Below are positions 1-63,730 of a stretch of DNA of 64,000 bases, one piece after another. Under the pieces are notes generated by a model that was given only the letters and a program-made list of their open reading frames with translations, was not told where the DNA came from and searched no databases. Made by a program: the position numbers and the translations under genes. The stretch is from the IMG/VR virus record IMGVR_UViG_3300017991_005548, positions 124,001-188,000 of that record. One strand, 5' to 3'. Position 1 is the stretch's first letter, and every line of letters starts with the position of its first letter.

Positions 1-1
1 A

Positions 2-3026: not shown

Positions 3027-3674
3027 GCAAAAATACGAAAATTCAACAAAACCCATTTCCTCAGGTACATTTTCATATCTAACAACAAACCCATTTTCGA
3101 GCAATTCATAGACATAAAGTCTTGGAAAATCGAATGGGCCTGGATACTCGTTTGAAGTTGTGCTACTGTCACTACTTAAAGATTGGCTTGAACTACTGGA
3201 TGAGTCTTTTGAGCTAGAACTGGACGTACTGTCTGAACTAGGAGTATCTTCGCTACTGGTGCTGGAAGAATCTAATGAGCTTGAACTAGAGGAATACTCT
3301 TGTGAGCTTGAACTAGGAGATCCTAAGCTACTTGAAGAAGATTCGCTTGCCTCTGTTGAGCTACTACTGCTTGATGAGTCTTTTGAGCTTGAAGAACTGG
3401 ATTCAGTAGAAAGTGAAATTGAAGTAAGACTGGATTCAGAAGTTGGGCTTGATGAGCTTGATGAAGATATTCCCCCTATTGATAAACTTGATTCACTAGA
3501 AGAACTATATTCAATAGCTGGATTATAAATAGGTATAGAGGCCCATGTGATAATGGCACTCGTTATAGGATAACCAGTTATGATAGTAATATATCCATCT
3601 CCTGAACCAGCGTAAGCCTTCTTTCCTGTCAGGGGATAGTTATCAGATCTTCTTAAATCGTATCGTCTTATCAT
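3021..3674 (-). CDS. Small putative virion protein: beta-rich domain interrupted by a ~120-aa Ser-rich tract
   Basis: ATGA overlap with the upstream giant gene. Beta-strand-like N- and C-terminal parts (YITIITGYPITSAIITW / LYVYELLENGFVVRY..FSYFC) flank a poly-Ser tract. Confidence 0.75.
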   Translation of the reverse strand: MIRRYDLRRSDNYPLTGKKAYAGSGDGYITIITGYPITSAIITWASIPIYNPAIEYSSSSESSLSIGGISSSSSSSPTSESSLTSISLSTESSSSSSKDSSSSSSSTEASESSSSSLGSPSSSSQEYSSSSSSLDSSSTSSEDTPSSDSTSSSSSKDSSSSSSQSLSSDSSTTSNEYPGPFDFPRLYVYELLENGFVVRYENVPEEMGFVEFSYFCL

Positions 3675-6600
3675 TCTGGTAGCCTTTTGCTTATTGGAAC
3701 GTTTATAATAGTTCCATCACTTGACCTCGGAATCCTTTTGGAAATATTATACATTACTCCAATATGATGGATAACTGCGACCTCATCAGTGAAATTTGTT
3801 ACTCTTGTTGCGACTCTGAATGATGACGCAAAGAACAAATCCATAAATATAGTTGTCGATGGGTCCTGTGGAGCCAAGAATGTAATCGTCCCTTCAATAT
3901 TATTGGCCGCGTATTCTGAAGAATCAATCAAAGTCCCTTGAGTCTCATCCAGTCCAAGTCTATAAACATTCAGTGTAAAGTTTGCATTCCATCGACCATT
4001 AACAGCCGTATAAGTTTTGAAATCTTCTGTTTGTAATAATTCATTAAACCTTGTGGGCAATATCGTATGTTGATCTGGAATGATGTTATAGTACTCTTCT
4101 GGTCTCAAGGATTCACTTTGAGTCATAAGGTATTCTACAGTAGAGTTCTCTGGGACATCTGCTTCGCTAGTTATATGAATTGAAGAAATGTATTCGTCAT
4201 CGTCCAAGTTCACTGAGATTGGTTTGAAGAAAATAACGAATTCTCTTGGGTTGTAATAATCAACTTCTACTCCACCGTTAATTACTGGGGTTTGGAAATC
4301 AGAGTTTCCAACGAGTTTGATCTCATATTGAATATATTTCTGCAAAGCATCAATTGACTTGTCATGTTCATAAGGAATTGAATAGTCAATGAAGTCAGTC
4401 CAGTCAGAATATGTAATCCCATCTACACTAGTTCTTATTCTGTAGGTTACTTCTGCTCCTGTAGGAACGGTAACTCCCGCTATTACAGTAGTGTCTGGGA
4501 TATTGGGATTCTCAAAGACAATCGTCCCAGTAAGAGTTGTTGTGTTAATTTGTAAATTATTCCCTGATGCGATCTCATTACAAATACTATTTATTTGGGC
4601 TGAAGTGCTGTTATCTAAGTAGAATACAGACGATCCTCCCTCCTCTCCATATTTCTCAAGCAAGATAGAGTCAGATGCATGGGGTTGCCCTAATTGAATC
4701 GGAATTATCTGAACTTCACCCTCTCCATCAACAAAGTTGACAGTTTGTACAGCTTGATTTAAAGAATTCTCGGATGTATTCTCGTCGCCATCTGTGACAA
4801 TGATTACAAATTTCTTATAGTCTTTGTAATCTTCGTTATTTGTTTGATATTGGACCAATTGCTCTGCGGCTCTTTTTACTGCATCATGCAATTGACTTGC
4901 ACCAAAGAAACCAAATGAATCGATTGCAGAGGCCAAGTAGATATCATCACTTGTTAACTCTGGGACTCTATGTCTAATGGATGGATACCATTGTTGAATA
5001 CTGGCCACATTGATGATGAATTGTCTTTCGGAAAGATAACCATCAGACGTTGCAGAAACTCTGGCCTTAATATGCATGTAATCTCTTTTTACTCCTGCTC
5101 CCATTACCAAGAATCCAGGATCAGTTCCTTCTTCGTCTTCTGGTGGTTTGTATGGAAGTAGTTCAACAGTAATACGAGATCCATCAGTTACAATCTCTTC
5201 TGGTACGACAATTACATTCCCGATATCGTCAACGTACTGATACTCAGGGAACTTCGCATAAACACGAATATCAAAACCTCTTTCAGTTTCTTCGATATCG
5301 GTAGCAGTATAGAATGTTGCGGACGTATCTTCACTTCCAGCAGGGCCAGCAACTCCTGATTGAGATGAAGCTTCTTCTTCGTCCTCATAATCTAATATAA
5401 AGATTGGTTCACCATTATTAAGGTCGTTCCCCAATTCTATCTTAGTAGCAAGTCGTCTTGCCAATTCAGTTCCAGCAGGCACTTCGAGCGTAGCAAACAT
5501 CATTCTGTTGCCTTCTGGATTCACAGGTTCATTTTCATATGGTTGCGAATTTGTGGGATCGTATCTAACTGTTCCATTTACAACAAAGTCTGTATCAATA
5601 TTCTTTGTTGGAAGAATGTTCGTCATGGCAACACATCTGACATTATGAGAGTGACTTAACTGCTCATCTGATTCATAGCTGGTAAACGTATGAGTATGAT
5701 TGCCAATTGAGCCGAACAAATTAATCGTACTTGTCGTAGTGCCATTCCCATTGATATCTAAGCTAATTACATGAGTGTGACTGCTTACTACTTCACCTCC
5801 GCTATCTTCGTCATATACGTCTGAACGAATTAAACCAGACTGAACAGAATAGTCAGACAAAGAAATGTCTTGGTTGGGACCGACAATCAAACAACCATCA
5901 ATCAGGTTTCTTGTATCCTTCATCTGAGGTAACTGTCCACCAGAAGCATTACTCTCTTCGCAAATTCCACTTTCAAATGTCACTTTTGGCAATGGATACT
6001 CTATTACTGACTCAAAATCGGTTCCCTCATTAATTGTGAGTTGATTGAGAATTGGTTGGCCTTTCCAAGTCAATTCAGCATAGATTCTTGCAGTAGTAAC
6101 TCCATCTCTGACAAAATTAGTCTCATATTTTAGCTCAATACCAAGGGGTTCCACATATTGTTGTAGTGGTTTTGGAATTCTAATGCCACCACCAGGAGTG
6201 GGGAGTGGCCTTCCATTGGCGATTTCTCCTCTTCTGTATCCCCCTTCTTCCTTTCTGTAAGAGGTATATGCTTCAACCTGACTTAACCAAGGCTCTCTAA
6301 AGATCTCACGTTCTCCAAGAGGTTGCTGATGTCCAATATTTTTGTTTTTAGGAATGGCTGTTAACTCAAGCCTATCTGTTTGCCAAGTGGACCTTCTAGG
6401 GTTTGAATTGAATGTTGTTAAAGTTCTTGGTAAATCATTCGGTTGTCCCAAACCTCTAAGCCTTTTTACACCATCCTCTCCAACGAAAATGTCAGTTGGG
6501 TTGAAGTCATCTTGTAAATCCACTACAATTTTTGCGTTTGGATTACTTTCTCCATCAGCGTAGATAGGTGTCAGAGCGTCTTTTGCATAAAAAATGAATG

Positions 6601-11587: not shown

Positions 11588-11589
11588 CT

Positions 11590-14500
11590 TTAATTAACTT
11601 CTGGCTGAATCAGAGGTAAAATCTCTGAACTTCCTTTCTTTGTAGAGAAGATTTCTCCACCTGTTGTACCTGCTACTGTTTGTCCTGACGCAGATTCAAC
11701 TCTTACTATACCATTGACTTCTAAGTTGCCTTCAACGAAGTCATTTAGGTCAGCTATATTCTCCCAGGTATTCCCATCATCCTCACTATTATAAATGAAA
11801 CTGCTTGAACCCACGACCAGAATATTATTTTGGTCTTTTTTCATATCGGAAACGACATCGATTAATGCAGTGTTTCTGTGAGTATGTTGAGAAGGCAACC
11901 CTCTAATCAGATAATCTTCCACCTGGATTGTTTCAACTTGATTGTTGCGTACCATGTGCTCATGTGTATTCGAAAATTCGTCTCTCAAAACCTTTACCTG
12001 AACAGTATTCGCAACAAAATAAGCGTTACTTGCAACGATCTCTAGTTTTATGGTTGTCGAGTCGATTACTGATTTGATAAAATTGGTTTCTGATTTATTC
12101 GCAGAAGATATGATAGTAATCTTATCTCCATTAACCATATTAGTTGTATCCTCAACCTTAATCGTTGAGTCTCCCAACTCAATATCTTCTGTGACAACAT
12201 GTGTACTTGTTACAAAGTCATCATAATATATATTCTTTGTATAGCCATAATTAGTGGCGTTGATTTCCCAACTCCAAGTCTCAGAAATTTTGATATTGTT
12301 GTATTCGGTGAAGTCCCAATTAGTATTGTTGAGTAACTTAACGGTCATTGTTGTCGCTGTATGCTGAACTACCTCACTAAAATATTCAACTCCAATTTCC
12401 AATGGGTTCCAGAATCGAATTCTTGCATCTTTGAAAAGAGTTCCATCTTTTTGAACCAATGCATTGTTAAACAAGCTTGTATCAGAGACTTCAAACTTAA
12501 CAGTGGCATTTAGAACCTGTTCAAAAGAAGCTATCGATCCACTAACAAATCCACCAACCAAATCCAAATCATGATAATGGGATGAATCCGTAGAAGTAAT
12601 TTTGTTATTGAAAGAAGATAATGGTTGGTAAATCGGACCAGTTAATCTAAATACATCGTCAGACCCTATAATCAACCCCACAGGAGTTGTTATTATTTCA
12701 GTATTAATTAAGCTAGAGAAGTCATTTAGTATGATCTTATTCCTAGAATTCTGATAAACTGTCATGCCTTCTATCAACGCGGCATCACTATCACCATTGG
12801 TAACTTGGAAATCAAAATCAACCAAGAAATTATCAACAACATTTTGGGTAAAAACTACGTCAAGGTTAACTTTTCCACTACTGTCAATCCCTACGAATGA
12901 TTGCCCAGGTATGATATCTTCATTAGTAGAATCTGGAGTCTCAGCATTGTAGGGGGTGATAGTTCCGTCAATGATTATCTGATTTGACGTATTAGAAACA
13001 ACTGTGTACTCTTTGCCAAGATTTCCATTTTGATCAGTTGATACGTAAATTTTTCCGTTAGCCAATTGATTGTTTTGCGTGAGGAAGTCAAAATCAACAT
13101 CAAGAACTGACCTATCTCCAACAAATTTTATTCTCTTGCCAACATACGTTAACCAAATAGCTACGAATTCAGTTTCCAGTTCTACAGTTATTTCTCCACC
13201 AATTGTCCTAGAAGAGTTTTCCGCGATAGTGTACCCAGCTACAATAGGCAAGTCTACAACATAAAGTGTTCTTCCTTTGTATTGATTTGCTGAAATAGTA
13301 TCTGACGCTTCAATTGACAGAACTACCGCATTATTAACAGGGTTGACAGAAATCGATTTTATTAAGCCAGATACATCGATATTAGTTACCTGTCCTGGGA
13401 ATCCAACAGACCAAATCTGACCATCATAAGGGAACTCACCTGTTGTAGTTTGACTATCTTCGTAAACTCCGATATCTGTACCAAATAATATATTTCCATT
13501 GTCAGCTTCTACCATATCGTTTACAACAACTGGGTAAACTTCAAATGCCAAATTACCACTCTGGCTTTGGATAGTTTCATTAGCCTCTCTGCCAAGAACT
13601 ACAATAGATGAATCAAATCCTGAGTTGAAAATCACCCTACCACTGAAGATAGGAGTGTCGTTCCCTTCGGCAAAAATGGAGATGTTGCGTTTGTCCAATT
13701 CTCCGTCTGCATATCTAAAGTCATTTGGATATGTATAGGATACTGACATAATGGTATGTCCAAAGGTTGAAACTTTGGATGACTGAATTGTTCCCCTAAC
13801 TTCTTCAAACTTCCTATACGTACTCCATACCTTACCCAAGTCGGAACTTCTAAGAATATAGTGAATCACATTACTCAGGTCCGTTCCTGCGGCACTAGCG
13901 AGAATCCCACCAGTTGATATCGGCAAAAAGTTTACGATGTTTACGTTTTCAACTGTAGCATCAAACAATCCAGAGGTCCATACAAAATCACCAAGGTATG
14001 GGGTGTAAGCAATTTTATTCTTCCCTCCAACTAGCAAAGTATTGGTCAGGTCAACGTTACCAAGGTTTTCCTCTCCATCAAACTGTTGCCACCAAGACCC
14101 CATAGTTAATCTAACACTTGCGATTGTTTCTGGATCTTCTTCAAAAGGAGGAGAAACCTGGATAGAGTTTGGAGTAGCTTTTACAATAACATAACTTGTG
14201 TTATTTTTAGGGTTCGATGGATCACTTATAGTTTCTATCTTAACTGCTCTATTTGGTACTAACTCTGAGTAAATTCCCCCAGCCGCTTTGATAATACCAA
14301 CTGTTGGATCTCCCTCAATATTTTTAAATGAAGCTTCATGAGGTGGAATAACAACAAAACTATCTTCAGGCCATCTTAAGGACATAGAGAGTGCAGGGAA
14401 TCTGACGGCTTCCTGATCTTGAAGCGTCCATGTGATCATATCCTGAGTCAAATAAACCCCGTTATCAGTTGCAACTAACAGATTCTCATCCCCAAAGACA

Positions 14501-28210: not shown

Positions 28211-28256
28211 AAGTTACACTCATATGATCATAGAATATCTAAACATTCTTCAATTT

Positions 28257-29348
28257 TTACTGCTCGTTTTCCTCTAACCATTTTTTAGCAAGCAAAGCCT
28301 TCCAATGATTATTCTTGACACTTTCTTGTATAGAAATGTGATCTTCTAGAGGATTTGTTAAGCAATCAAACATACATGGTTCAAATTCCCATGCGATTTT
28401 CTTCTCTTCTGCCCTTTTCCGAAGGTTGTTAACAAGATCGCATGACTTTTTGCAGTTTATGCATTCATTGTATACCATTTGCTCCCTCAACCTAGTGCAG
28501 AAAGTTCTGACATTATCCCTAAAAATCATTTTTGCATTTTCTTCGTAGTAATCAATGATTTTCTGGTATTCTTGTTTTTTCATGAACTCATAAATTGTAT
28601 CAGCATATTCCCAAAGATGATTACCTATCTCTTCTGGATAACTCCTTTTGAGTTTCGGATCAATTTGATGTCGAGAGAAGTCCCCTTCTTCCAAGAAATT
28701 TTGAACCTTGCCTAATGTTTCATCAGGATACATGATAAGATCATCAAACGAAATAACCAGAATAGGTATGTCTGGGTTCGCTAAAAGCCATTTGCATGCC
28801 TGATATGTTACGTTAATAAACATTTCGGGAGTATGAATCCTTAACCCTGACTCAACTTCTTCTTCATGAGTCATAAAAGGAAATCGTTTTAATCTTTCCT
28901 GAGATTTAGCAACTTGCCTTGGATCTCTAAGCATATAGATGATTTTGTCAATATATTCAGGATTACTGTTAAAAAGACCCTGGCTAACGATCTTGCATAT
29001 TTGGCCATCAAGCTTAGGCATATTCATGTGCCACTTGATGCCTCTAACTGAGTATCGGCATTCCCAGAATCCGTTAGGATTCATGTCTTTGCTAATCTTA
29101 AAATCTCTTTCGGCATTTGGGGCAACTATTTCTCTTATATATTGCCTGGCCTCAAACTCTTCATCTGTTTCTTCATCGTGTTTTTGTAGTCCAATCGCGA
29201 TTCTTTGTTCCTGAGGAAATTTATGACCAATTATACGATCATCTCCAAAGGCTATGCGCAAGCAATCCATCATTAATGATGTGCCAGAACGAGGACACCC
29301 AGAAACAGTAATCAGACCTTTATTTTGTTGGTCAGAAGGAACATCCAT
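28257..29348 (-). CDS. PAPS-dependent sulfotransferase (P-loop sulfotransferase family) with C-terminal 6-Cys region
   Basis: 5'-phosphosulfate-binding loop ITVSGCPRSGTSLMM, NPNGFWE, 3'-phosphate-binding IIYMLRDPRQVAKS, and ILVISFDDLI..P motif. GGAG RBS. Confidence 0.88.
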   Translation of the reverse strand: MDVPSDQQNKGLITVSGCPRSGTSLMMDCLRIAFGDDRIIGHKFPQEQRIAIGLQKHDEETDEEFEARQYIREIVAPNAERDFKISKDMNPNGFWECRYSVRGIKWHMNMPKLDGQICKIVSQGLFNSNPEYIDKIIYMLRDPRQVAKSQERLKRFPFMTHEEEVESGLRIHTPEMFINVTYQACKWLLANPDIPILVISFDDLIMYPDETLGKVQNFLEEGDFSRHQIDPKLKRSYPEEIGNHLWEYADTIYEFMKKQEYQKIIDYYEENAKMIFRDNVRTFCTRLREQMVYNECINCKKSCDLVNNLRKRAEEKKIAWEFEPCMFDCLTNPLEDHISIQESVKNNHWKALLAKKWLEENEQ

Positions 29349-56600: not shown

Positions 56601-56860
56601 TGAGATCTAATAGACTCCAGGGCTTCTTTGTATTTTTTGAAAGCACTATCTACATCTTTTACGGACTTGATGAAGTCTTTGAGTTTATCTTCACTCATAC
56701 CGAGAGATTTTGCAAAATCCTTAAGATTTTTTTCGGCCTCTTTAGTGTTTAAGGAAAGACTGGCGGCTCTTTTAAGAGCTTCAATAAAGTTATTCAACTG
56801 AGTCATTTGCTCAGGAGTAACAACCAAATCTTCTATAAAATCTCGTGAAATGTCTGCCAT
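50627..56860 (-). CDS. Tape measure protein (2077 aa)
   Basis: Long helical/coiled-coil composition; Gly-zipper hydrophobic segment GAGGGAIVGGLLGSLAGPAGTMIGATIGGIVG; downstream of the tail tube and frameshifting chaperone. Confidence 0.88.
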   Translation of the reverse strand: MADISRDFIEDLVVTPEQMTQLNNFIEALKRAASLSLNTKEAEKNLKDFAKSLGMSEDKLKDFIKSVKDVDSAFKKYKEALESIRSQSKKSAEAQNELHKTVEDTLISYGRMSGNIDKAIKAIRKEAEEKGRNSQLTDRSRESIIKELNAIKESIKKTKEARIEEKRHALAKEKIAKESRTYSEKIKDNIKALHKMQSAMRAAGAEFNKFLGAFGAQTFSIGNAMNSVLEYNQSLYDLERTYKVFGVGNKNMADTMRYVSKETSFSKKEFVDFAQSVASGYVGMTPTVQQIAQFAKILQTQFGPNVKVAKEVAQDLLGVFESYPPALDAMMEVSKVMEEIRTGDKDEAAGARERLKVLRTSLAVAGEYGNMSAQQRERLLKYTTETNQKEQDLLQTNKSVAKVQQQSADAVLKMGQALEPHIKTIAEGMSKVLEYMNSLPEKVFLVVGAFQALTTLMGTGIASQIGKVPKRFEIWLDSLEKIRDKTEDVSDAIGRAGEGVASAGRGRGGAGRAASAVASATRSRADAFEESARRWTDTIEQGANRRIRGDQIANRGRRIADRRNSEYVRSALRRGGQEAGAGMRAGSAGGAGSQMMAGMKMAIPMAVIGAVMSGMGEYSRSRSAGFDKGDSLRRSAVSGVGAGGGAIVGGLLGSLAGPAGTMIGATIGGIVGQKISEAINREELEKKKNEEADQRSRKKFRTGSLTGIKDESDTLGEMLKRWERIKKTHEANLKLLASQRDVIYSQIDALNEMFVMTSKQASEAYSEAFQVILKETEEAQRYLDEVLGARREIMIGLGVDKNRLGTLDEAVSAIEDRIRQLGEEGIQLELDVQAAKQINDLDAVKKKMDELNANELMRRSLTTEVLKIAEQQKTVIDNQKTAADAVSKVIRGAVDEHLKMNSVLESRLDTERTLMENAQFGMGASIQMMQKQVNLSYDNIKAIQEQIQLQDQRVAIEVSDEKIMKGLTKEERERAKMIMLSTFNAAKNQDTTEGIQAALGQGLATLKEMGVTDNKRRMIHGILNKQIGDFNDLQQKSLSAQNKIYELTKDIREGYLDALREMSFGAGEFEAIIGTQEMGVTQLMDSVKGVTGIDFLNTMALGGYTIQGSEASKARMAAPSKYTIGGFQAGAFAGAQVDDIFGYGRSAQAFQQHMMGKGAAPTAGYIGDNREHENTKGAILEQNINKQGFMESEFSRALHTWSGGGNNLQSVKIDVRTGEGGKGAPGQERRTRRGANTVTAFAGAVAGGSRGTTPEATNVFAPSAAPGPMGIPPVMLRQMQKDPKMQGLLKYSQEISNKMTELNDSGRNDSKTLKSLQKEQVKVSKAIVRRQRDIAKGFSGASQTLSDGSMHWGVDVKQFLSWGGHRGPMEGAPAPATGPTRKPAAKPVTGGATPKGGTATATSEIKKLSREQEYIMSTQIESWNQLDARMNEFKGVEAQAIASLAMNIQSSMKNAEENSYEMMGLEYSMGTAIKELRKRDSRMAETIQSQIVKEEMNHLDNLIKEGNLNAYTISKSTERLAKSLGMTEDEIIKKVHAVSENATELMKAHKEVAVSMSSGSKKQEDMSKAIRMGEALSIKRGSLVGTAQERMHVLLQKGEGQDKRSAIAAQAEYVFEELMKEEVFRSKSLKEQEAEFRDIMASVMGYTDDKEAIAHGKAKVSKIIRKNRQDRAEKRKKASAEAIRREEEYMDKVDAEYRKRKGIPEPGSQQSRRVKKEPAKQAQGPQFKKGIEWEDFLTKAEKGKLSRSKGIRLATARQMGKEAIPEEVKKNVLPKSTKATRPSSKAPTPTPTPTPTPTPVLDRYASVPEDIGTVDLTGPIEKMGVPKIPTASIGQKVMSDEEAREIARKGLAKSRAGRDTRPAGEGVNYLSMPKVNKKLPATPYSQNITRMKELQSKALDRDATSAERAAARSELEKLKGADKSALKWGSTALGGHVRYDPDRQAEAEAEAARVKEREKAYADARANAPESTGGRVPTALGGNQGIIVHRGGKAKPQTPRAVGKGKGGVVRSDIVSDAATQAEYRRSSGREMAGLDGGPSESGGKEVLGELKITLSDKIDAEMTKNSRLRMSFEKMA
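51464..51503. repeat. 12-bp tandem repeat encoding a Pro-Thr linker in the tape measure protein
   Basis: tggagtaggtgt x3, giving PTPTPTPTPTP. Confidence 0.85.
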
Positions 56861-56863
56861 TTA

Positions 56864-57967
56864 TTAAACCGTACTTTTTTCCAAAATACCTTGCTCTAAT
56901 TTTGCCAATAAGAGTGATACTGATAATATGTATCCTGCATGGACGATAGAATTCTCACTAAATTCCATCATTACATTTGGAGGTTCTTCTGTTTCTGGGA
57001 TTTCAGGATATCCCATATCCCCAAACTCACCTTTTGCTTTATTGTAAGCATCATAATCCAGTTTTGTTCGTTCGTATTCCATCTCAGAATCTGTCTTTGA
57101 AAAGGTTGACAAGTCTAAATTCTCAAGAATCTCTCTTCTGGCATTATTAAATGCCCCAACAAGCCCCCCTTTGTTTAGATAAGTTCCACTAATAACACCA
57201 TTGTATATCTTGTAAACTACTTGATCGACTTTATTCAAACGTGGTATATAAGGTAACGCATTCAGCATTTCCGCATAATCAGAGAGTTCGTTCGATCTTA
57301 TCAATGCTTTTGTTTTGTCCCAATATTCTTGGTCTCCTAATGCACCTAGAATCTCGTTTGAGAAATGATGCAGGAAGAAACTAAATGTGTTATGAAGTCT
57401 TTCTCTTCTTTCTTTCTCTCTCTTGCCCTTCTCTTTTTGTAAGAATTCTTTAGCTCCCCAATGACTTTCTAAATCTTTTGTCTCTTGAACATATTTGCTT
57501 TCATAAGCATTTACCATTTTTCCCATAGACGTTGCTATGGCATTCTCTTCTGCTTCTGAAGATTCGACTGAGTCAAATGCTGATAGATATGTTGCGTAAT
57601 TAGATAGATATTCGCGATATTGCCCTCTAGCTAATAATGTAGACAATGTTTTATAAATGAAGGGATATTGCCTGAATTTTGCCGTGTTATTCATTAATGA
57701 ACCCAACACACTAGAATAAAATTCTGAGACATTGTCAGATCGAGGGTTCGGTCTTCTAGAGAAAGATTTCCCTGCATTTTCAAAAAGGTAAACTAAAGCT
57801 TGAGGGACTTCTTTGACAGACAACTCTCTTGTAGGAAACGTCTTTACAAAGTCATGGAAATCTTTTTCTTGACCTTCTGCCAATTTGAGAAAAAGATCTT
57901 CAATTTTCTTATTCTTGGAGGTACAAGCTAACTTATTTAGGTCCTGGAGTAATTCATAGGGGATCAT
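56864..57967 (-). CDS. Hypothetical alpha-helical protein between the chaperones and the tape measure
   Basis: 367-aa ORF preceded by the AAAGG-N19-GAATA motif. No recognisable family. Confidence 0.75.
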   Translation of the reverse strand: MIPYELLQDLNKLACTSKNKKIEDLFLKLAEGQEKDFHDFVKTFPTRELSVKEVPQALVYLFENAGKSFSRRPNPRSDNVSEFYSSVLGSLMNNTAKFRQYPFIYKTLSTLLARGQYREYLSNYATYLSAFDSVESSEAEENAIATSMGKMVNAYESKYVQETKDLESHWGAKEFLQKEKGKREKERRERLHNTFSFFLHHFSNEILGALGDQEYWDKTKALIRSNELSDYAEMLNALPYIPRLNKVDQVVYKIYNGVISGTYLNKGGLVGAFNNARREILENLDLSTFSKTDSEMEYERTKLDYDAYNKAKGEFGDMGYPEIPETEEPPNVMMEFSENSIVHAGYILSVSLLLAKLEQGILEKSTV

Positions 57968-58000: not shown

Positions 58001-58029
58001 TATTCAAATAAATGAATCACAAGACCTTT
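58001..58029 (-). promoter_or_regulatory. Putative late promoter AAAGG-N19-GAATA
   Basis: AAAGGtcttgtgattcatttatttGAATA, with identical boxes and spacing at 60431-60459 and 61450-61478. Confidence 0.65.
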
Positions 58030-58558
58030 AGAAAAGTCCGTTGCCAGCGATTTTTTCAGATACCTTTGCTCTCAAAGCCTTGACAATTTTCGGATGTAGT
58101 TGAGCCATATCTGTAAGTGGTCTCTCCATAGTCCATGATCTAACCAATGTCATGAGCCTAACATTTTCAAGCTCTATGAAGTCAGCAAATTGAGCATCTT
58201 CAATACTTTGAATGGGCCTGGAGTTCATGATATACTCAGTGTCTTTTTGACTAGGGTATTTAAAAGTCATATTGAAAGAATGAGTTTTCTTGTCAGTACC
58301 TTCATACTCTTCGTCAAAATCTTTGATCACTGGTTCTCTTAGATCATCAAGATAATACTCAACATCTATCTCGAAAGTGTCACTTTCTGTAATGAAGATG
58401 TCGTCATTGTTATCAACCTTAGGCTTTTCAACTTTTGGCTTTTCGGCCTTAACTTCCTCGACCTTTGGTTCTTCAACCTTTGGTTCTTCAACTTTAACTT
58501 CCTCAACCTTTGGTTCTTCAACCTTTGGCTTTTCAACTGTAGGTTTTTGCTCGTCCAT
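58028..58558 (-). CDS. Second tail assembly chaperone-like protein (paralog of 58866-59297) with N-terminal KVEEP repeats
   Basis: FITESDTFEIDVEYY vs FIKEDSTVDVIIYY; RLMTLVRSW vs RLVQLIHSW; LHPKIVKAL vs LAPEIAETI. Start is probably MDEQ (AGGA RBS); the alternative is ATG at 58594. Confidence 0.65.
   Translation of the reverse strand: MDEQKPTVEKPKVEEPKVEEVKVEEPKVEEPKVEEVKAEKPKVEKPKVDNNDDIFITESDTFEIDVEYYLDDLREPVIKDFDEEYEGTDKKTHSFNMTFKYPSQKDTEYIMNSRPIQSIEDAQFADFIELENVRLMTLVRSWTMERPLTDMAQLHPKIVKALRAKVSEKIAGNGLF
58414..58535. repeat. 15-bp degenerate tandem repeat (KVEEP/KVEEV/KVEKP)
   Basis: aacctttggttcttc-type units. Confidence 0.85.
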
Positions 58559-58590
58559 TTTTTTCTTTCCTTTTTGTCTTCTGCGCCTTC

Positions 58591-58869
58591 TCATATTTCT
58601 CTCATCATTTTTGTTCCAGGCTTCATTGTTGACCTGGCCTCAGATTTGAATTTTTGTGCTTGCGCCTTAGCGTCCAATGCGGCATTCTTTACCCTTTTCA
58701 TGTAATTATGTTTTTGAATCCATTTATAAGGTAAAGATGCAATATACGTGGGAGTCCAGCCATATTCTTCAATAAAGCTGAGTTCCACAAGGTCTCTCAT
58801 AATATCAGGATCTACAGCAGTTGTTATGGACCCCGTGCTCATAAAATAGCCTAACAACTGCTCATCTAT
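58591..58869 (-). CDS. C-terminal (T) portion of the frameshifted tail assembly chaperone (gpGT-like)
   Basis: The -1 frame is open across the upstream stop (ATA GAT GAG CAG TTG TTA GGC...). YGWTP..I..LP motif is typical of the T segment. It has no clear RBS of its own. Confidence 0.8.
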   Translation of the reverse strand: MDEQLLGYFMSTGSITTAVDPDIMRDLVELSFIEEYGWTPTYIASLPYKWIQKHNYMKRVKNAALDAKAQAQKFKSEARSTMKPGTKMMREI

Positions 58870-59297
58870 TTTTTTTCCTCTTCCTCGCTCAAATAAGTTA
58901 TCTCATCATAGGCGTTGAGGATAGTTTCGGCAATCTCTGGAGCCAAACTTTTAATAGATTTCTCTGTCACTCTAACAGGGACTTGATTACCTTTGTTGTC
59001 GGTTGCTGTCGCATCCCAACTATGAATCAATTGGACAAGTCGGTTCTCTTTGTATAACTTATAATTGAATCGACGGTTTCCTTCCCCGTCCAATTCAATC
59101 CCACCTTCTTGTAAGTCATTGTAAAGCCCCCAAGTCAACTGTTTCATTTTAACAGTAATCTTCTTCAGCTTTTCCTTATCTTCATCTGTTAGGTCTTCAG
59201 AAGTTTTGAACTCTTGTTCTGAGTAGGATTGATAATGCAGTCCTATTTTTTTGTAGTAGATAATGACATCTACTGTGCTGTCTTCTTTGATAAACAT
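58866..59297 (-). CDS. Tail assembly chaperone (gpG-like)
   Basis: Immediately after the tail tube; ends EEEEKK* on the slippery GAA AAA AAA TAG; AGGAG RBS. Confidence 0.82.
   Translation of the reverse strand: MFIKEDSTVDVIIYYKKIGLHYQSYSEQEFKTSEDLTDEDKEKLKKITVKMKQLTWGLYNDLQEGGIELDGEGNRRFNYKLYKENRLVQLIHSWDATATDNKGNQVPVRVTEKSIKSLAPEIAETILNAYDEITYLSEEEEKK
58869..58875 (-). other. Programmed -1 ribosomal frameshift site A AAA AAA
   Basis: The A8 run at 58869-58876 forms an X XXY YYZ heptamer in frame just before TAG. A -1 slip enters the 58591-58857 ORF. Confidence 0.85.
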
Positions 59298-59329
59298 AGC
59301 ACAACTTTCTCCTATTGTTATGTGTTGGT

Positions 59330-59337
59330 ATTATACA
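59330..59337 (-). promoter_or_regulatory. TGTATAAT -10-like element upstream of the chaperone
   Basis: Directly follows the terminator U-tract. Shared octamer with 29385-29392 and 50605-50612. Confidence 0.45.
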
Positions 59338-59338
59338 G

Positions 59339-59366
59339 AAAAAAGCCCTCTAAAAGATAGAGGGCT
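59339..59366 (-). terminator. Rho-independent terminator after the tail tube gene
   Basis: AGCCCTCTA-TCTTT-TAGAGGGCT 9-bp stem followed by TTTTT on the minus strand. Confidence 0.8.
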
Positions 59367-59379
59367 AGAAATAGAAGGT

Positions 59380-59402
59380 GGTCCCTTTTTATTAAAGGGA
59401 CC
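59380..59402. other. Second perfect hairpin in the tail tube 3' UTR
   Basis: GGTCCCTTT-TTATT-AAAGGGACC 9-bp stem, without a clean U-tract. Confidence 0.7.
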
Positions 59403-59433
59403 TTGATAAATTGTGCAAATGAGTAACTTGGTA

Positions 59434-60363
59434 TTATGGGGAAGCAGAAAGATCCCAAGGGAATCCAGTCTGATGGGTAACTCCCGTAAATCCAACTGTT
59501 GAAATGACAGGACCCGTATTCAAGGTAGGTTCTACCCTGTGGAATCTAACTTTCATTTCGGTTGTTGAAGATCCACCCGTACAATTACTGCTCAATCCAA
59601 ACTGGAGGGTATGTACTCCGTCTGCACAATAATCTTCGAATGTTTCAGCCCCGTTAAAGTCTGGTGCATTGTAAACAGAAAGCGTTCCAGAGATCTGTCT
59701 GATACCAGGAACAATATCGAATGGGAACAAGTCAGCTTGACCCAAACCATATACTGTTTCAATGTTGTTGTTCACGGTGAATTCGAAATTACTGAATTTA
59801 ATATCAGTCAAAACGGCAGGGATGTCGTTATTTACTGGGTCAGTTGCACCGCCAGCAATGATTGTGACGTTGACTTTATCCCAAGTAAGCAACTTTTCCG
59901 CATCAGTGAAGTGAGGTGGAGGATTGGAACCAAACGCATTTGCGCTTGTACCAATAACATCCAAAGAAAACTGAGCAACTTCACCAGCCGCTACTGAAAA
60001 ATTGAAAGTATTTACAAAGAGGTTTTCAAACAATCTGTCTCTGCTACAGAAGTAATAAAGCTGGATATCTTTAGTACTGAGACCACCACAAGCATCGCCT
60101 GCGTCATCTCTACCAGCGGCCCATTGGATCACGCTGTCTGTTCCAGATAGAAATGTTTCGGTGACGGGTCCGCTAATGCTTCCGCCAACCTCGATTTTAC
60201 CGTATACGTAGGCATCCCTGTCCCAGTCACCTGAAACAAGGTCGGGTGCCTCGATTTCTTGTCTTGCAGTGATATTAGCATCGGAGAATCGGAGTTGAGT
60301 ACCACCGATATCTGCAATACCTCTATAACCTGCATTTACTAAACCATTAGCTCCTATTGACAT
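59434..60363 (-). CDS. Major tail (tube) protein, siphovirus-type
   Basis: VGGSISGP, FNFSVAAGEVAQFSLDVIG and FSNFEFTVNNNIE...GIRQISGTLSV patterns. Strong AAGGAGA RBS, own promoter motif and terminator. Precedes the chaperone and tape measure. Confidence 0.8.
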   Translation of the reverse strand: MSIGANGLVNAGYRGIADIGGTQLRFSDANITARQEIEAPDLVSGDWDRDAYVYGKIEVGGSISGPVTETFLSGTDSVIQWAAGRDDAGDACGGLSTKDIQLYYFCSRDRLFENLFVNTFNFSVAAGEVAQFSLDVIGTSANAFGSNPPPHFTDAEKLLTWDKVNVTIIAGGATDPVNNDIPAVLTDIKFSNFEFTVNNNIETVYGLGQADLFPFDIVPGIRQISGTLSVYNAPDFNGAETFEDYCADGVHTLQFGLSSNCTGGSSTTEMKVRFHRVEPTLNTGPVISTVGFTGVTHQTGFPWDLSASP

Positions 60364-60430
60364 ATCATTTATCTCCTTCTTGTCGCAATTGATTTAAGGT
60401 TTCTCCCTAAATCTGCACCAATATTAATTA

Positions 60431-60459
60431 TATTCTCTAACTTTTTACAAAATCCCTTT
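60431..60459 (-). promoter_or_regulatory. Putative late promoter AAAGG-N19-GAATA (tail tube)
   Basis: AAAGGgattttgtaaaaagttagaGAATA, also followed by TATAAT. Confidence 0.65.
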
Positions 60460-60468
60460 GTTACGATA

Positions 60469-60822
60469 CTAAAATGCCATAGGTGCCCTGTACGACACTC
60501 CACTGCTGTATAAATCGGCGGCGTGACCATTGACATAATCGTACAAATAGTCCTCTATCATATCATTAATATCTGTATACGCAGAGGCCGTATCGGTTCT
60601 TCTCTGCTTAACACCATTCAAGACCAATTCATCCAAACTCATAACCAAAAGTTCAGGAAGATTAACTCCATCAGTATCTCTTGCGCTTGTTCTAATCCTG
60701 AAGTAATAGCTTACCTCAGAAATAAAAGTACCAGCACTTTGTGCGAGAATATTACCTAAGAAATCAACATTAATCGTTCTGGTGTTGTTAGCTGTCTCAT
60801 CATATATTCTAAATGTGGCCAT
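60469..60822 (-). CDS. Small putative virion protein, paralog of 60835-61416
   Basis: MATFRIYDE..TRTINV..IL..Y..IRTS.R..DG...P aligns with MATVQIFHE..TSTVSV..IL..Y..ISTS.R..DG...P. AGGAGG RBS. Confidence 0.75.
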   Translation of the reverse strand: MATFRIYDETANNTRTINVDFLGNILAQSAGTFISEVSYYFRIRTSARDTDGVNLPELLVMSLDELVLNGVKQRRTDTASAYTDINDMIEDYLYDYVNGHAADLYSSGVSYRAPMAF

Positions 60823-60834
60823 TCTCTTTCCTCC

Positions 60835-61416
60835 TTAAGCAGACGAACTGCTTGACTCAGATTGAGAACTCATACTCTGAGAACTCATACTCTGAGAACT
60901 ATCACTTTGAGAACTATCAGACTGAGAACTCATACTCTGAGAGCTACTAGATTCACTTTGTGAACTTTCAGATTTTGAACTCATACTCTGCGAACTCATA
61001 CTCTGCGAACTCATGCTTTGAGTACTTGAGCTATTACTTTGTGAGCTTCCAGATACTCCACCAGAACTACTTGAACTTTCTGAGTAATTTTCAGATGAAG
61101 TCGAGCTTTCTGATTGACTGGATGAACTATCACTTGAAGACTGACCATATTCTGCTTGATCAACAAAATATTCAATCCAACCATTAACCAACTCTGTGAA
61201 GTCAGCGGCAGGTGAGGAGGCTCCAGGAGCCACATCAGCCAAATCTTTAATTAAATAGGTAGGAAACGTAGATCCATCAACCTTCCTGATACTCGTAGAT
61301 ATAAGAAGATATGAATCTCTCGTCATCAAACCATCAGACAATATGGCAGTCTGCAAATTTACAGATACTGTCGAAGTACTGCCATCTTCTTCATGAAATA
61401 TTTGAACAGTTGCCAT
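60835..61416 (-). CDS. Small putative virion protein with a free ~100-aa C-terminal Ser tract
   Basis: Folded ~90-aa N-terminal domain followed by a Ser tract that runs to the stop codon. Confidence 0.8.
   Translation of the reverse strand: MATVQIFHEEDGSTSTVSVNLQTAILSDGLMTRDSYLLISTSIRKVDGSTFPTYLIKDLADVAPGASSPAADFTELVNGWIEYFVDQAEYGQSSSDSSSSQSESSTSSENYSESSSSSGGVSGSSQSNSSSTQSMSSQSMSSQSMSSKSESSQSESSSSQSMSSQSDSSQSDSSQSMSSQSMSSQSESSSSSA
60863..61015. repeat. 15-bp tandem repeats (SQSMS/SQSDS)
   Basis: tgagaactcatactc and tgcgaactcatactc units. Confidence 0.85.
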
Positions 61417-61449
61417 GTTTACAACCCCTAAATATAAAGTTTTAAGTCT

Positions 61450-61478
61450 TATTCTATATCAAATTGCCGAAACCCTTT
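61450..61478 (-). promoter_or_regulatory. Putative late promoter AAAGG-N19-GAATA
   Basis: AAAGGgtttcggcaatttgatataGAATA. Confidence 0.65.
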
Positions 61479-61501
61479 CAACAATTTGTTATTTTTCCCC
61501 T

Positions 61502-62524: not shown

Positions 62525-62739
62525 TATCCAGAATATCCCGTTTTTATATCGCGATACCAATCGCCAAGTCGCAATTCCATATCACCACTTTTCTCTTTTT
62601 CAATCTCTTCCATGTTTTTTCTAAGTCTAGACATTGGTTTCAAACGCCCCTGATCCAATGTATCAAAAGATCCATTGACACAAGATTTGTAAATTTCCAT
62701 TTTTCTAGCATATCTAGCGAATCTGTTCTTTATCCTCAT
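62524..62739 (-). CDS. Small basic hypothetical protein
   Basis: 71 aa, with ATGA and TAATG overlaps on the two sides. Confidence 0.65.
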   Translation of the reverse strand: MRIKNRFARYARKMEIYKSCVNGSFDTLDQGRLKPMSRLRKNMEEIEKEKSGDMELRLGDWYRDIKTGYSG

Positions 62740-63434
62740 GGAGACTCCCTTCCAAATTGAATATCATCAGTAGGTGTTTTGTAAGAATCAAATAAACTAT
62801 GTCTTGCGAATCTCTTGCCAACATGTTCTTGACCCATCAAGATCACATTTCCAGTAATAATACTGTCCATAGAAAACATAGCAAGCTTTCTTTGCTCTGT
62901 TCCGTACTGAGAGACATCTGGAGACTGTTCTGCGGCAAATAGGCGGTCATACGCATACGATACGGCCAATCTAGCTGTAACCAAAGGAATAGGATCTGGA
63001 TATTCCAATATGCTGATTAAACTATCAGCGTCATAACTGGAAGTAACTGAGTTCAGAATCAATTGATCTAAATTAGGAATTGATTCAATAACCGCTTCTT
63101 CATAATCACATTCACTTTGAAGTCTAACTAACTGACCTTTGGCGAATGGCCCAGTATCATGAACTGAAACTTTTACATTTGTTCCAGAAGAAACATTATT
63201 GAGGATCTCTGTTTCATGGATTTTGATTCGCCTCAATGGACATACATATATTGGGCGAAGTCTTGCGTCAACTTCCTGTTGGGCAAACTTAATGAATTCG
63301 CAAATCTGATCTGGAGTAAATTTACTCCTATTTGTATTATCACATTTGCCAGGAACAGGAGTTCCTATGTTTCTGTCGCCAACTGTAACATTCTCAGGTA
63401 GTAATGTGATGGCATTTTGAACTGTACAATACAT
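62736..63434 (-). CDS. Mu gp36-like (DUF1320) head-tail adaptor with an inserted beta domain
   Basis: MYCTVQN, IKFAQQEVDARLRPIYVCPL, then after ~70 aa PDPIPLVTARLAVSYAY...MDSIITGNVIL. Confidence 0.75.
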   Translation of the reverse strand: MYCTVQNAITLLPENVTVGDRNIGTPVPGKCDNTNRSKFTPDQICEFIKFAQQEVDARLRPIYVCPLRRIKIHETEILNNVSSGTNVKVSVHDTGPFAKGQLVRLQSECDYEEAVIESIPNLDQLILNSVTSSYDADSLISILEYPDPIPLVTARLAVSYAYDRLFAAEQSPDVSQYGTEQRKLAMFSMDSIITGNVILMGQEHVGKRFARHSLFDSYKTPTDDIQFGRESP

Positions 63435-63444
63435 ACTTCACTCC

Positions 63445-63490
63445 AAAAAAAAGCACTCTTGTTATTTATTTCAATAACAGGAGTGCTTTT
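63445..63490 (-). terminator. Long-stem intrinsic terminator (possibly bidirectional)
   Basis: AAAAGCACTC(C)TGTTATT-loop-AATAACA(A)GAGTGCTTTT with one mismatch, ending in a T8 run on the minus strand. Confidence 0.8.
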
Positions 63491-63514
63491 CCCTATGGAG
63501 CTAGGTCTATAGTT

Positions 63515-63730
63515 TTATAGATCGTACAGATAATCCCCGATATTTATGAACTCAAAAGCTACATCATTTACTCTGTTCACTTTATCGGTTGTTTCTGAAT
63601 TCCTTTCACTACATTCACAAATTCCATCATACCAAGGAAAAGTACATTGCGTACATAATCCATTCGCTTTTGCCCAAGCGATATGATCTTTAAGATACTT
63701 TCGTTTCTCTTTCCGTTCTTGTTTAGTCAT
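63515..63730 (-). CDS. Small hypothetical protein with a CxxC...CxC zinc-finger-like motif
   Basis: LCTQCTFPWYDGICEC; TAATG overlap with the upstream gene. Confidence 0.65.
   Translation of the reverse strand: MTKQERKEKRKYLKDHIAWAKANGLCTQCTFPWYDGICECSERNSETTDKVNRVNDVAFEFINIGDYLYDL

What the first reader, a model, noticed from the sequence alone, without database searches (positions are those of the whole stretch)
58001..61478. Recurrent AAAGG-N19-GAATA promoter-like motif (sigmaH-like)
Exactly the same boxes and 19-nt spacer occur in three intergenic regions on the coding strand: 58001-58029, 60431-60459 and 61450-61478. Degenerate AGG-N19-GAA versions lie at ~28247-28275 (AGAGG..GAAGA) and ~63468-63496 (ATAGG..GAAAT, overlapping the terminator). 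The motif resembles the Bacillus sigmaH consensus (AGGA...GAAT), suggesting late transcription by a phage-encoded or host alternative sigma factor.
Basis: partly seen in the sequence, partly recalled or inferred. Interest (0 to 1): 0.6.

Follow-up and report, generated by a model that had tools for sequence, protein, structure and literature searches.

The report
SigmaH-type late promoters of a megaphage
The repeated AAAGG-N19-GAATA motif is a real, evolutionarily conserved promoter class in front of the structural genes of an uncultured phage of more than 500 kb. The phage carries its own sigmaH-like sigma factor that most likely reads these promoters, which is an ordinary phage strategy in a new lineage.

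Summary
AAAGG-N19-GAATA occurs exactly at window 58001-58029, 60431-60459 and 61450-61478 on the minus (coding) strand. A fourth exact copy lies inside a gene at 11967-11995. That makes 4 copies against 0.23 expected.

The core AGG-N19-GAA is the strongest spaced dyad in all upstream regions of the genome (49 against 6.9 expected, z 20.8). It is specific for a 19-nt spacer and for the coding strand. It sits about 30-37 nt before start codons, including those of the large terminase, a protease-like gene (possibly the prohead protease) and the tail tube gene.

In 13 diverged metagenomic relatives the boxes and spacing persist at the same syntenic intergenic positions while the spacers have changed.

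The window belongs to a phage of at least 509 kb. The 296-kb record lacks any sigma gene, but the overlapping 476-kb contig encodes four. One of them, 280 aa, matches SigH models best and has a SigH structure as its only match among solved structures. The motif fits the published SigH architecture (AGGA, 17-18 nt, GAAT).

Best explanation: a late or structural promoter class read by host RNA polymerase carrying the phage's sigmaH-like factor.

No RNA data exist, so transcription starts, timing and the pairing of sigma with promoter are inferred.

This is a new member of a known kind.

The parts
58001..58029 (-). L-class promoter site 1: AAAGG (58029-58025), 19-nt spacer, GAATA (58005-58001). 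It lies 34 nt before the ATG of the 367-aa gene 56864-57967, which precedes the 2077-aa gene. The AAAGG box overlaps the stop codon of the upstream gene.
   Evidence: matrix score 24.2. The syntenic site is conserved in L086, L091 and L092. No significant RNA fold.
60431..60459 (-). L-class promoter site 2, 68 nt before the ATG of the tail tube gene.
   Evidence: AGG-N18/19-GAA is conserved upstream of the tube orthologue in 14 loci whose tube proteins are 42-100% identical.
59434..60363 (-). Tail tube protein gene (309 aa), the gene driven by site 2. Two tandem intrinsic terminators follow it at 59402-59380 and 59366-59344.
   Evidence: Pfam Phage_tube_2, 45.2 bits against a cut-off of 27. 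PHROG 290 minor tail protein. Terminators.
61450..61478 (-). L-class promoter site 3, 34 nt before the ATG of the 193-aa gene 60835-61416. A hairpin (z -4.8) includes the AAAGG box.
   Evidence: score 22.5. The syntenic site is conserved in L086, L091, L089, L095 and L096. Fold.
63468..63496 (-). L-class promoter site 4 (ATAGG-N19-GAAAT) before the 232-aa gene 62736-63434. It is embedded in a -33 kcal/mol hairpin followed by U8 (63430-63515), the terminator of the upstream gene, and the -10 box lies in the loop.
   Evidence: score 23.3; z -6.8. The syntenic site is conserved in L086, L091, L089, L092 and L095.
28247..28275 (-). Weak candidate L-class site (AGAGG-N19-GAAGA) before the 1091-aa gene 24935-28210. 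Uncertain.
   Evidence: Matrix score 12.1, the lowest kept. The AGG lies in the last codons of ORF 28257-29348.
11967..11995 (-). Exact AAAGG-N19-GAATA inside the 2513-aa ORF, 380 nt before the next gene. Probably a chance match or an internal promoter; not resolved.
   Evidence: score 15.5.
3702..3741 (-). 40-nt weight-matrix window holding an AGG-N19-GAAC site (matrix score 19.3) at the end of the 2638-aa ORF, about 28 nt before the 217-aa gene 3021-3674. Candidate only.

Best explanation
The motif is the -35 box (A-AGG) and -10 box (GAAT-A/T-A) of one class of phage promoters. I call it class L; its consensus is T-N3-R-N-AGG-N19-GAA(T/A)(T/A)A. There are about 45 copies in a megaphage genome of at least 509 kb. 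They are concentrated in the virion-structure and packaging half of the genome, and each sits about 30-37 nt upstream of a start codon.

Host core RNA polymerase is directed to these promoters by a phage-encoded sigma factor of the SigH family (280 aa; G001 163344-164186). That gene is transcribed with the phage's replication genes, in the order topoisomerase I, clamp loader, sigma, beta clamp. The operon lies behind a different promoter type (GTATAAT). This gives a cascade from replication-phase genes to the sigmaH-like factor to the structural genes.

Shown here: the motif is real, depends on spacer and strand, is intergenic, and is conserved in position in relatives. The phage has a SigH-like sigma gene, and the motif matches the SigH architecture.

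For: Enrichment in this genome:
- The window holds 4 exact copies against 0.23 expected.
- The count peaks at a 19-nt spacer on the coding strand only.
- An unbiased dyad scan of 305 upstream regions of the composite genome ranks AGG-N19-GAA first, with 49 against 6.9 expected, z 20.8.
- AGG-N19-GAA[ATC][AT]A occurs 85 times, 44 of them in the 7.3% of the genome that is intergenic, against 3-7 intergenic for spacers 17, 18, 20 and 21.
- Distances to the start codon cluster at 29-37 nt, and A is enriched 10-11 nt after GAA.

Downstream genes:
- They include the large terminase and a protease-like gene and the tail tube protein.

Conservation in relatives:
- AGG-N18/19-GAA lies upstream of the tube gene in 14 loci whose tube proteins are 42-100% identical, and the spacers differ.
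- All four window sites recur at syntenic gaps in L086, L091, L092, L095 and L089.
- Across 13 relatives' loci there are 26 intergenic hits at N19 and 9 at N18, against 0-3 at other spacers, while coding hits stay flat at 2-6.
- Upstream of the protease-like gene in a relative about 69% identical in DNA, the boxes and the 19-nt spacing are kept although the spacer sequence is unrelated.

The sigma factor:
- No sigma gene and no RNA polymerase beta or beta' gene lies in the 296-kb record.
- The same phage's 476-kb contig overlaps the record and encodes four sigma-70-family proteins.
- For one of them the five best NCBIfam hits all belong to the SigH group: three SigH models and two sibling PRK08295 models that NCBI names only 'factor sigma-70', with E from 2e-25 to 2e-17.
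- Its family profile finds only 3MZY, 'RNA polymerase sigma-H factor', among solved structures (E 5e-16), with a near-identical region 4.2 helix.
- Four relatives that carry this sigma at 50-57% identity also show the N19 peak.

Match to published SigH promoters:
- The published architecture is AGGA, 17-18 nt, GAAT (PMC12456013).

Other local evidence:
- The sigma operon is preceded by a GTATAAT-type promoter, not an L site.
- Sigma-70-type promoters are not enriched around the window sites, 20 against 22.6 expected.
Against: - No transcript data exist. Only DNA runs from sediment and seawater hold this phage.
- The sigma scores far below the SigH model cut-offs (89.5 bits against 212), so its specificity cannot be assumed from homology.
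- Three other phage sigma factors and an unknown host's own sigma factors are alternative readers.
- Some L sites precede non-structural genes, such as an endonuclease, and a few lie in the replication half of the genome, so 'late' is only approximate.
- Gene calls were made with a simple longest-ORF rule, so some intergenic or coding labels may be wrong.
Confidence: 0.66

Rival explanations
1. The sites are promoters, but they are read by the host's own sigmaH or another host alternative sigma. The phage's SigH-like protein would then have another role, such as manipulating the host's stationary-phase or sporulation programme.
For: The motif equals the cellular SigH architecture. Phage-borne homologues of sporulation sigma factors that act on host genes, and are dispensable for lytic growth, are documented (10.1101/2021.11.12.468384).
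Against: About 45 promoters in front of essential virion genes would then depend on a sigma that the host makes only in the transition state. The phage sigma and the motif co-occur in five diverged phage lineages. The sigma is fixed inside the replication operon in all of them. The host is unknown.
Confidence: 0.12
2. The sites are promoters read by one of the three other phage sigma factors (the 276-aa RpoD-like one, or the tandem pair of 282 and 271 aa that resemble RpoS and RpoH), not by the SigH-like one.
For: The phage encodes four sigma factors and shows at least three promoter-like classes, L, GTATAAT and cTTGACA-N12/13-TGCTATGTT. Pairing by homology alone can mislead.
Against: Those three sigma factors match RpoD, RpoS and RpoH models over regions 2 and 4, which predicts boxes of the TTGACA and TATAAT type. 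Only the SigH-like factor belongs to a family whose consensus has both the AGG(A) and GAAT boxes at this spacing.
Confidence: 0.1
3. Sigma appropriation as at T4 middle promoters. Host sigmaA would read a -10 box such as TAGAAT or TTGAAT, and a phage activator bound at the AAAGG box would replace -35 recognition.
For: T(A/T)GAAT resembles TAnnnT. Site 3 has TAGAAT, and site 2 overlaps a perfect TATAAT.
Against: The position that would be A-11 is A in 19 sites and T in 18 of 45. The position that would be T-7 is T in 20, A in 15 and C in 7. Those two are the most conserved bases for sigma-70 family group 1. After AGG, the matrix's conserved bases are the G, A and A of GAA, as expected for SigH. 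No activator candidate was identified.
Confidence: 0.06
4. The motif is not a promoter. It would be a DNA or RNA element of another kind, such as an operator for a repressor, part of terminators, a processing site, or a repeat spread by recombination.
For: Two of the four window sites overlap stable hairpins: 63430-63515 with z -6.8 and 61434-61494 with z -4.8.
Against: Sites 1 and 2 have no significant fold. The spacers differ among copies and among orthologues, so the copies are not a spread repeat. The two-box structure with a fixed spacer, the strand bias and the fixed distance to start codons are properties of promoters. Rfam gave nothing above its gathering thresholds.
Confidence: 0.05

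Closest known systems
SigH (Spo0H) promoters and sigma factor of Bacillota: -35 AGGA, 17-18 nt, -10 GAAT
   Same: The boxes (AGG[A], GAAT) and spacing are the same. The phage sigma's best family matches and its only match among solved structures are SigH. The region 4.2 helix is nearly identical to that of 3MZY: KAVDNALLRIRKK against KSIDNTIQRIRKK.
   Different: The sigma is encoded by a phage. It scores well below the SigH equivalog cut-offs. It has an N-terminal extension (the first ~75-80 residues fall outside every SigH model match) and a conserved C-terminal (D/E)(L/I)P(L/I/M)F tail that falls outside the part aligned to 3MZY. Its regulon is phage virion genes, not transition-state or sporulation genes. 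In this phage the base after AGG is A, G or T rather than A.
Bacillus phage SPO1 gp28 (middle) and gp33/gp34 (late) sigma factors
   Same: Phage-encoded sigma factors redirect host core polymerase to phage-specific two-box promoters in a temporal cascade. gp28 groups with SigH, SigD and SigI in phylogeny. From my own knowledge, the gp28 -35 box is AGGAGA.
   Different: The -10 boxes differ (from my own knowledge, TTTnTTT for gp28 and GATATT for gp34). No close homologue of this sigma exists among 50,697 GenBank phage records.
T4 late transcription (gp55, gp33 and the sliding clamp gp45)
   Same: A phage sigma controls the virion genes. Here the sigma gene lies between the clamp loader and clamp genes, and the protein ends in a conserved hydrophobic tail, as gp55 does (PMC2988020).
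   Different: T4 late promoters have only a -10 box (TATAAATA), and gp55 is a minimal sigma. Here there is a full two-box promoter and a sigma with regions 2 and 4. Clamp binding is not shown.
Sporulation-like sigma factors (SigF/SigG type) of Bacillus phages SP10, Goe3 and Eldridge
   Same: They are homologues of alternative sigma factors of Bacillota carried by phages.
   Different: Those factors act on host sporulation genes and appear dispensable for lytic growth. Here a matching promoter class lies in front of the phage's own structural genes.

Membership tests
SigH-type promoter (Bacillota) | -35 element AGGA | tested here: met
   The weight matrix's most conserved -35 bases are A, G, G, at 1.4-1.9 bits. 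In the dyad-selected sites (AGG fixed by the search) the next base is A in 17, G in 11 and T in 17 of 45 in this phage, and A in 27 of 35 in four relatives. The match is therefore AGG(A) rather than a strict AGGA.
SigH-type promoter (Bacillota) | -10 element GAAT | tested here: met
The weight matrix's most conserved -10 bases are G, A, A, at 2.2, 1.2 and 1.4 bits. In the dyad-selected sites (GAA fixed by the search) the next base is T in 20, A in 15 and C in 7 of 45, followed by (T/A) and A (A in 39 of 45).
SigH-type promoter (Bacillota) | 17-18 nt between AGGA and GAAT | tested here: met
   AGG-N19-GAA equals AGGN-N18-GAA. There is a sharp peak at N19 with a minor one at N18.
SigH-type promoter (Bacillota) | Transcription starts a few nt downstream and depends on the SigH holoenzyme | not testable with these tools
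   No RNA run holds this phage, and the phage is uncultured.
SigH sigma factor (NCBIfam TIGR02859, NF006145-8) | The best-scoring family models are SigH models | tested here: met
   The top five hits are NF006147, NF006148, NF006145, TIGR02859 and NF006146, with E from 2e-25 to 2e-17. Three are named SigH; NF006147 and NF006146 are sibling PRK08295 models that NCBI names only 'factor sigma-70'. The next hits are the general sigma-70 model and SigI, at 3e-8 or weaker. The only PDB hit is 3MZY, a sigma-H factor.
SigH sigma factor (NCBIfam TIGR02859, NF006145-8) | The score reaches the curated equivalog cut-off | tested here: not met
   89.5 bits against 212 for NF006147, and 68.7 against 294.8 for TIGR02859. 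The protein is SigH-like, not an equivalog.
Sigma-70 family | Region 2 and region 4 domains | tested here: inconclusive
   Pfam Sigma70_r2 scores 25.4 bits against a cut-off of 24, so region 2 is met. Region 4 is not found by Pfam, but it aligns to region 4 of 3MZY and is covered by the SigH models.
Phage late (structural-gene) promoter class | Enriched upstream of virion and packaging genes, on the coding strand | tested here: met
   The sites lie upstream of the large terminase, a protease-like gene, the tube gene and tail genes. 37 of 45 sites lie in the half of the composite genome that corresponds to G000, mostly at 380-509 kb.
Phage late (structural-gene) promoter class | Active late in infection | not testable with these tools
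   There are no expression data.
T4-type clamp-activated late transcription | The sigma factor binds the sliding clamp through its C-terminal tail | tested here: inconclusive
   The conserved tail and conserved synteny with the clamp loader and clamp are suggestive. The complex-prediction job gave no verdict. No other phage protein has the same tail.

The most novel reading that the evidence does not exclude
The sigmaH-like factor is tethered to the phage's own beta sliding clamp through its conserved C-terminal (D/E)(L/I)P(L/I/M)F tail. Its gene lies between the clamp loader and clamp genes in all five lineages examined. Transcription from the AGG-N19-GAAT promoters would then be coupled to phage DNA replication, as in T4 (gp55, gp33, gp45) and as recently reported for Mu. 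Here, though, the factor is a complete two-box sigma of a cellular family and the clamp is of the bacterial beta type.
Probability: 0.2. Interest if true: 0.8.

Novelty: new member of a known kind. Interest (0 to 1): 0.48.

Why it matters
Uncultured phages of more than 500 kb are known almost only as gene lists, and how they schedule hundreds of genes is unknown. This work gives a concrete, testable regulon of about 45 promoters with a defined consensus, a candidate sigma factor and a plausible three-tier cascade:

- cTTGACA...TGCTATGTT promoters at one genome end;
- GTATAAT promoters in the replication and tRNA region;
- AGG-N19-GAAT promoters in the virion region.

The motif can be used to annotate operons and late genes in this whole metagenomic clade. 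It also shows that a sigma lineage known for stationary-phase and sporulation entry in Bacillota has been taken over as a phage developmental switch.

The conserved gene order of clamp loader, sigma and clamp, together with the C-terminal tail, makes replication-coupled late transcription outside the T4 family directly testable.

Tried and rejected
- Sigma and polymerase genes: I searched the 296-kb record for Sigma70_r2, Sigma70_r4, Sigma70_r4_2 and TIGR02937, and for RNA polymerase beta and beta'. Nothing reached a cut-off. One weak r4_2 hit at G000 90106-90165 is an N-terminal helix-turn-helix of a 254-aa protein in the tRNA region, not a sigma factor. This would have wrongly suggested 'no phage sigma' had the overlapping 476-kb contig not been found.
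- DNA search: a megablast of 8 kb against GenBank phages found no match.
- Finding relatives: single-protein searches of viral contigs with the sigma and with the tube protein found only the phage itself. An alignment query and the metagenome scan were needed.
- RNA evidence: only DNA runs were found, so no transcription starts could be mapped.
- Clamp binding: complex prediction with the phage beta clamp and the last 40 residues of the sigma gave no verdict (score 0.00, controls not run). This is evidence neither for nor against binding.
- Tail motif elsewhere: I looked for the same C-terminal LPLF-type tail on other phage proteins, as T4 polymerase shares the gp55 tail. None was convincing.
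- Known RNA families: an Rfam scan of 56.5-64 kb gave only two chance-level hits far below gathering scores.
- Sigma-70 promoters: the consensus scan of the region found no enrichment.
- Distant terminase relatives: upstream of the terminase gene in relatives 54-56% identical there is no orthologous site, because gene order differs there. In one pairwise alignment, indels hid a conserved site, which I recovered by counting.

Full report
OBSERVATION

The exact pattern AAAGG-N19-GAATA occurs four times in the window, all on the minus strand: at 58001-58029, 60431-60459, 61450-61478 and 11967-11995. The expectation is 0.23, and none of 100 shuffles reached four.

All long ORFs of the window are on the minus strand. 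They lie 34, 68 and 34 nt before the start codons of genes 56864-57967, 59434-60363 and 60835-61416. The copy at 11967-11995 lies inside the 2513-aa ORF.

GENOME CONTEXT

The window is bases 124001-188000 of a 296,327-bp IMG/VR record, G000. It is 38.5% G+C, and about 80% of its genes are on the minus strand.

This record is only part of the phage. An IMG/VR contig of 476,248 bp (G001) carries an identical terminase gene. It overlaps G000 so that G000:1 equals G001:212354, while the last 3 kb of G000 have no match in G001, whose end corresponds to about G000:263,895. Composition and skew are uniform across the join.

The genome is therefore at least 509 kb. Metagenome contigs of 524,692 and 523,871 bp carry the same genes. 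The phage comes from sediment and seawater metagenomes, and no RNA run holds it. It has no close relative among GenBank phages.

IS THE MOTIF MORE THAN CHANCE?

- G000 has 9 exact copies, all on the minus strand, and 7 of them lie directly upstream of genes.
- With relaxed boxes the count peaks sharply at a 19-nt spacer and only on the coding strand. AGG-N19-GAATA occurs 25 times on the minus strand and 0 times on the plus strand, against 4-13 for other spacers.
- A dyad scan that was not seeded with the motif covered all trinucleotide pairs at spacings 10-24 in the 305 upstream gaps of the composite genome. It ranks AGG-N19-GAA first, with 49 regions against 6.9 expected, z 20.8.
- AGG-N19-GAA[ATC][AT]A occurs 85 times, and 44 of these are in the 7.3% of the genome that is intergenic. 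Spacers 17, 18, 20 and 21 give 3-7 intergenic hits.
- The aligned sites give the consensus T-N3-R-N-AGG-(A/T/G)-W-T ... T-T-T-N-T-W-GAA-(T/A)-(T/A)-A. The spacer carries little information.
- Distances from GAAN to the start codon cluster at 29-37 nt. A is enriched 10-11 nt after GAA, where a transcription start would be expected.

WHAT LIES DOWNSTREAM

- In the window, site 2 drives the tail tube gene (Pfam Phage_tube_2, 45 bits against a cut-off of 27). Two tandem terminators follow that gene.
- Site 1 precedes a 367-aa gene and the 2077-aa gene behind it. From its size and position after the tube gene I take the 2077-aa gene for the tape measure; this is an inference that was not tested.
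- Site 3 and the site at 63468-63496 precede small genes of the same tail and connector module.
- Elsewhere, L sites precede the large terminase (PHROG 2, E 5e-28), a protease-like gene (possibly the prohead protease), a beta-helix tail protein, genes of 1305 and 4276 aa, and also an endonuclease.
- 37 of 45 sites lie in the G000 half of the genome, mainly at composite 380-509 kb.

CONSERVATION IN RELATIVES

A metagenome scan with the tube protein gave 20 loci.

- In 14 loci with upstream sequence, whose tube proteins are 42-100% identical, AGG-N18/19-GAA follows the stop codon of the conserved upstream gene, and the spacer sequences differ.
- In the longer loci (L086, L091, L092, L095, L089, L096) the motif recurs at the syntenic gaps of all four window sites.
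- Pooled over 13 relatives (71.5 kb, of which 10.5 kb is intergenic), the sense strand has 26 intergenic hits at N19 and 9 at N18, against 0-3 at eleven other spacers. Coding hits stay at 2-6 throughout.
- Near the terminase gene of a relative about 69% identical in DNA, the terminase site is conserved. The site before the protease-like gene keeps AGG, the 19-nt spacing and GAAT around a spacer of unrelated sequence.

This is the signature of selection on two boxes and their distance, which is what a promoter shows.

WHO READS IT

G000 contains no sigma gene and no RNA polymerase beta or beta' gene. The left 212 kb of G001 encode four sigma-70-family proteins.

Three of them match RpoD, RpoS and RpoH models. 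The fourth is 280 aa (G001 163344-164186). For it, the five best NCBIfam hits all belong to the SigH group: three SigH models and two sibling PRK08295 models that NCBI names only 'factor sigma-70', with E from 2e-25 to 2e-17, though all far below their cut-offs. A profile of 22 family members finds one solved structure only, 3MZY 'RNA polymerase sigma-H factor' (E 5e-16). The region 4.2 recognition helix is nearly the same in both.

The published SigH architecture is -35 AGGA, 17-18 nt, -10 GAAT (PMC12456013). That is AGG-N18/19-GAAT, exactly what is found here.

The sigma family is large in metagenomes, with 441 hits, and JGI labels many of them a sporulation-specific sigma factor or sigma-H. 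It is absent from isolated phages: only 9 weak matches of 32% identity or less, on short unannotated records, among 50,697 GenBank phage records.

Four IMG/VR contigs carry orthologues at 50-57% identity. All four show the same N19, or N18/19, peak in their upstream regions, and there the -35 box reads AGGA(A/T)T, closer to the cellular consensus.

THE CASCADE

The sigma gene sits in an operon of topoisomerase I, a second tube-like gene, a 96-aa gene, the clamp loader gamma/tau, the sigma factor, the DNA polymerase III beta clamp and a 413-aa gene. This order is kept in all four relatives.

The operon is preceded by a GTATAAT-type promoter, not by an L site. GTATAAT occurs 110 times, 44 of them intergenic, mostly in the replication, nucleotide and tRNA region.

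A third motif, cTTGACAt-N12/13-aTGCTATGTT, has 24 strict copies, 15 of which lie within the first 30 kb of G001.

The simplest reading is early, then middle, then late classes, with class L as the late one. This timing is inferred from gene content only.

RIVAL EXPLANATIONS

- Host SigH could read the sites, and the host is unknown. However, the sigma and the motif travel together in five phage lineages.
Homology argues for TTGACA and TATAAT-like specificity for those three.
- Sigma appropriation of the T4 MotA type is unlikely. The positions that would be A-11 and T-7 are not conserved, whereas G, A and A are.
- A non-promoter element is unlikely given the two boxes, fixed spacer, strand bias and fixed distance to start codons. 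Sites 1 and 2 have no significant fold, and Rfam gives nothing. Two sites do overlap hairpins. At 63430-63515 a terminator of -33 kcal/mol carries the -10 box in its loop, which is a compact arrangement of terminator and promoter.

A SPECULATIVE EXTENSION

All 22 aligned family members end in (D/E)(L/I)P(L/I/M)F(M/L/I), with P275 and F277 invariant. This tail lies outside the region aligned with cellular SigH. It resembles clamp-binding tails, in that T4 gp55 and gp33 use a conserved hydrophobic C-terminus to bind gp45 (PMC2988020).

Together with the conserved gene order of clamp loader, sigma and clamp, this suggests replication-coupled late transcription. The complex prediction gave no verdict, and no other phage protein shares the tail. 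It stays a hypothesis, at about 0.2.

VERDICT

The kind of system, a phage sigma factor with a matching late promoter class, is well known from SPO1 and T4 and from jumbo phages that encode sigma factors (PMC7824862). This is a new member of that kind, in an uncultured megaphage clade and with a SigH-family factor.

Not shown: transcription starts, timing, and the pairing of sigma with promoter.

Noticed in passing
G001 (476-kb contig) about 2.5-30 kb, outside the window; loci L041-L042: A third promoter-like class, cTTGACAt-N12/13-aTGCTATGTTga. It has 24 strict copies, 22 of them on the minus strand, and 15 lie within the first 30 kb before small genes. This looks like an early region with sigmaA-type promoters that have an extended -10 box.
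   Followed up: partly
Whole genome; in the window for example 59330-59336(-), 50605(-), 29385(-): A GTATAAT motif occurs 110 times, 44 of them intergenic, and mostly lacks a TTGACA box. It is concentrated in the replication and tRNA region. One copy precedes the operon that contains the sigmaH-like gene.
   Followed up: partly
window 63430-63515 (-): A very stable hairpin (-33.2 kcal/mol, z -6.8) followed by U8. It acts as terminator of the upstream gene. The AGG box of the L site lies at the foot of its 5' arm and the GAAAT box in its loop.
   Followed up: partly
window 61434-61494 (-): An imperfect 13-bp inverted repeat (z -4.8) encloses the AAAGG box of site 3. No U-run follows it. It could be a binding site or a weak terminator.
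   Followed up: no
G001 163344-164186 and alignment A1: Every member of the sigmaH-like family ends in (D/E)(L/I)P(L/I/M)F. The gene always lies between the clamp loader and beta clamp genes. The tail may be a clamp-binding motif.
   Followed up: partly
G001 165743-166795 (L049:5743-6795:-): A second Phage_tube_2-like gene (350 aa, 38 bits) lies inside the replication operon between the topoisomerase I and clamp loader genes, and it is conserved there in four relatives. This is an odd place for a tail tube homologue.
   Followed up: no
G000 1-3000 (= G001 212354-215353) and G001 208-220, 356 and 475 kb: The 296-kb record starts inside a family of dispersed and tandem repeats (period about 369 bp, copies 68-96% identical). 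This probably explains why the assemblies break there and why IMG/VR labels the piece a provirus.
   Followed up: no
G000 89-106 kb (L008, L009): 26 tRNA genes lie in two clusters, including 4 Arg, 5 Ser, 5 Leu and duplicated Asp, Ile, Tyr and Cys. A 254-aa protein with an N-terminal helix-turn-helix lies among them.
   Followed up: no
window 3671-19131 and 50627-56860; G000 261791-274621: There are giant ORFs of 2638, 2513, 2077 and 4276 aa in the structural region. The 2077-aa gene has raised G+C (0.43) and strong AT skew.
   Followed up: no
window 60835-61416 (-): The 193-aa protein downstream of site 3 is encoded by DNA with many near-tandem repeats of about 15 nt (for example GAGAACTCATACTCT) in its 3' half, which encode a Ser-rich tail.
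   Followed up: no
window 58028-58857 (-): Two overlapping small ORFs (88 and 188 aa) lie between the tube gene and the presumed tape-measure region. The 188-aa one contains Lys/Pro/Glu/Val-rich repeats that give a weak tape-measure PHROG hit. They may be a pair of tail assembly chaperones.
   Followed up: no
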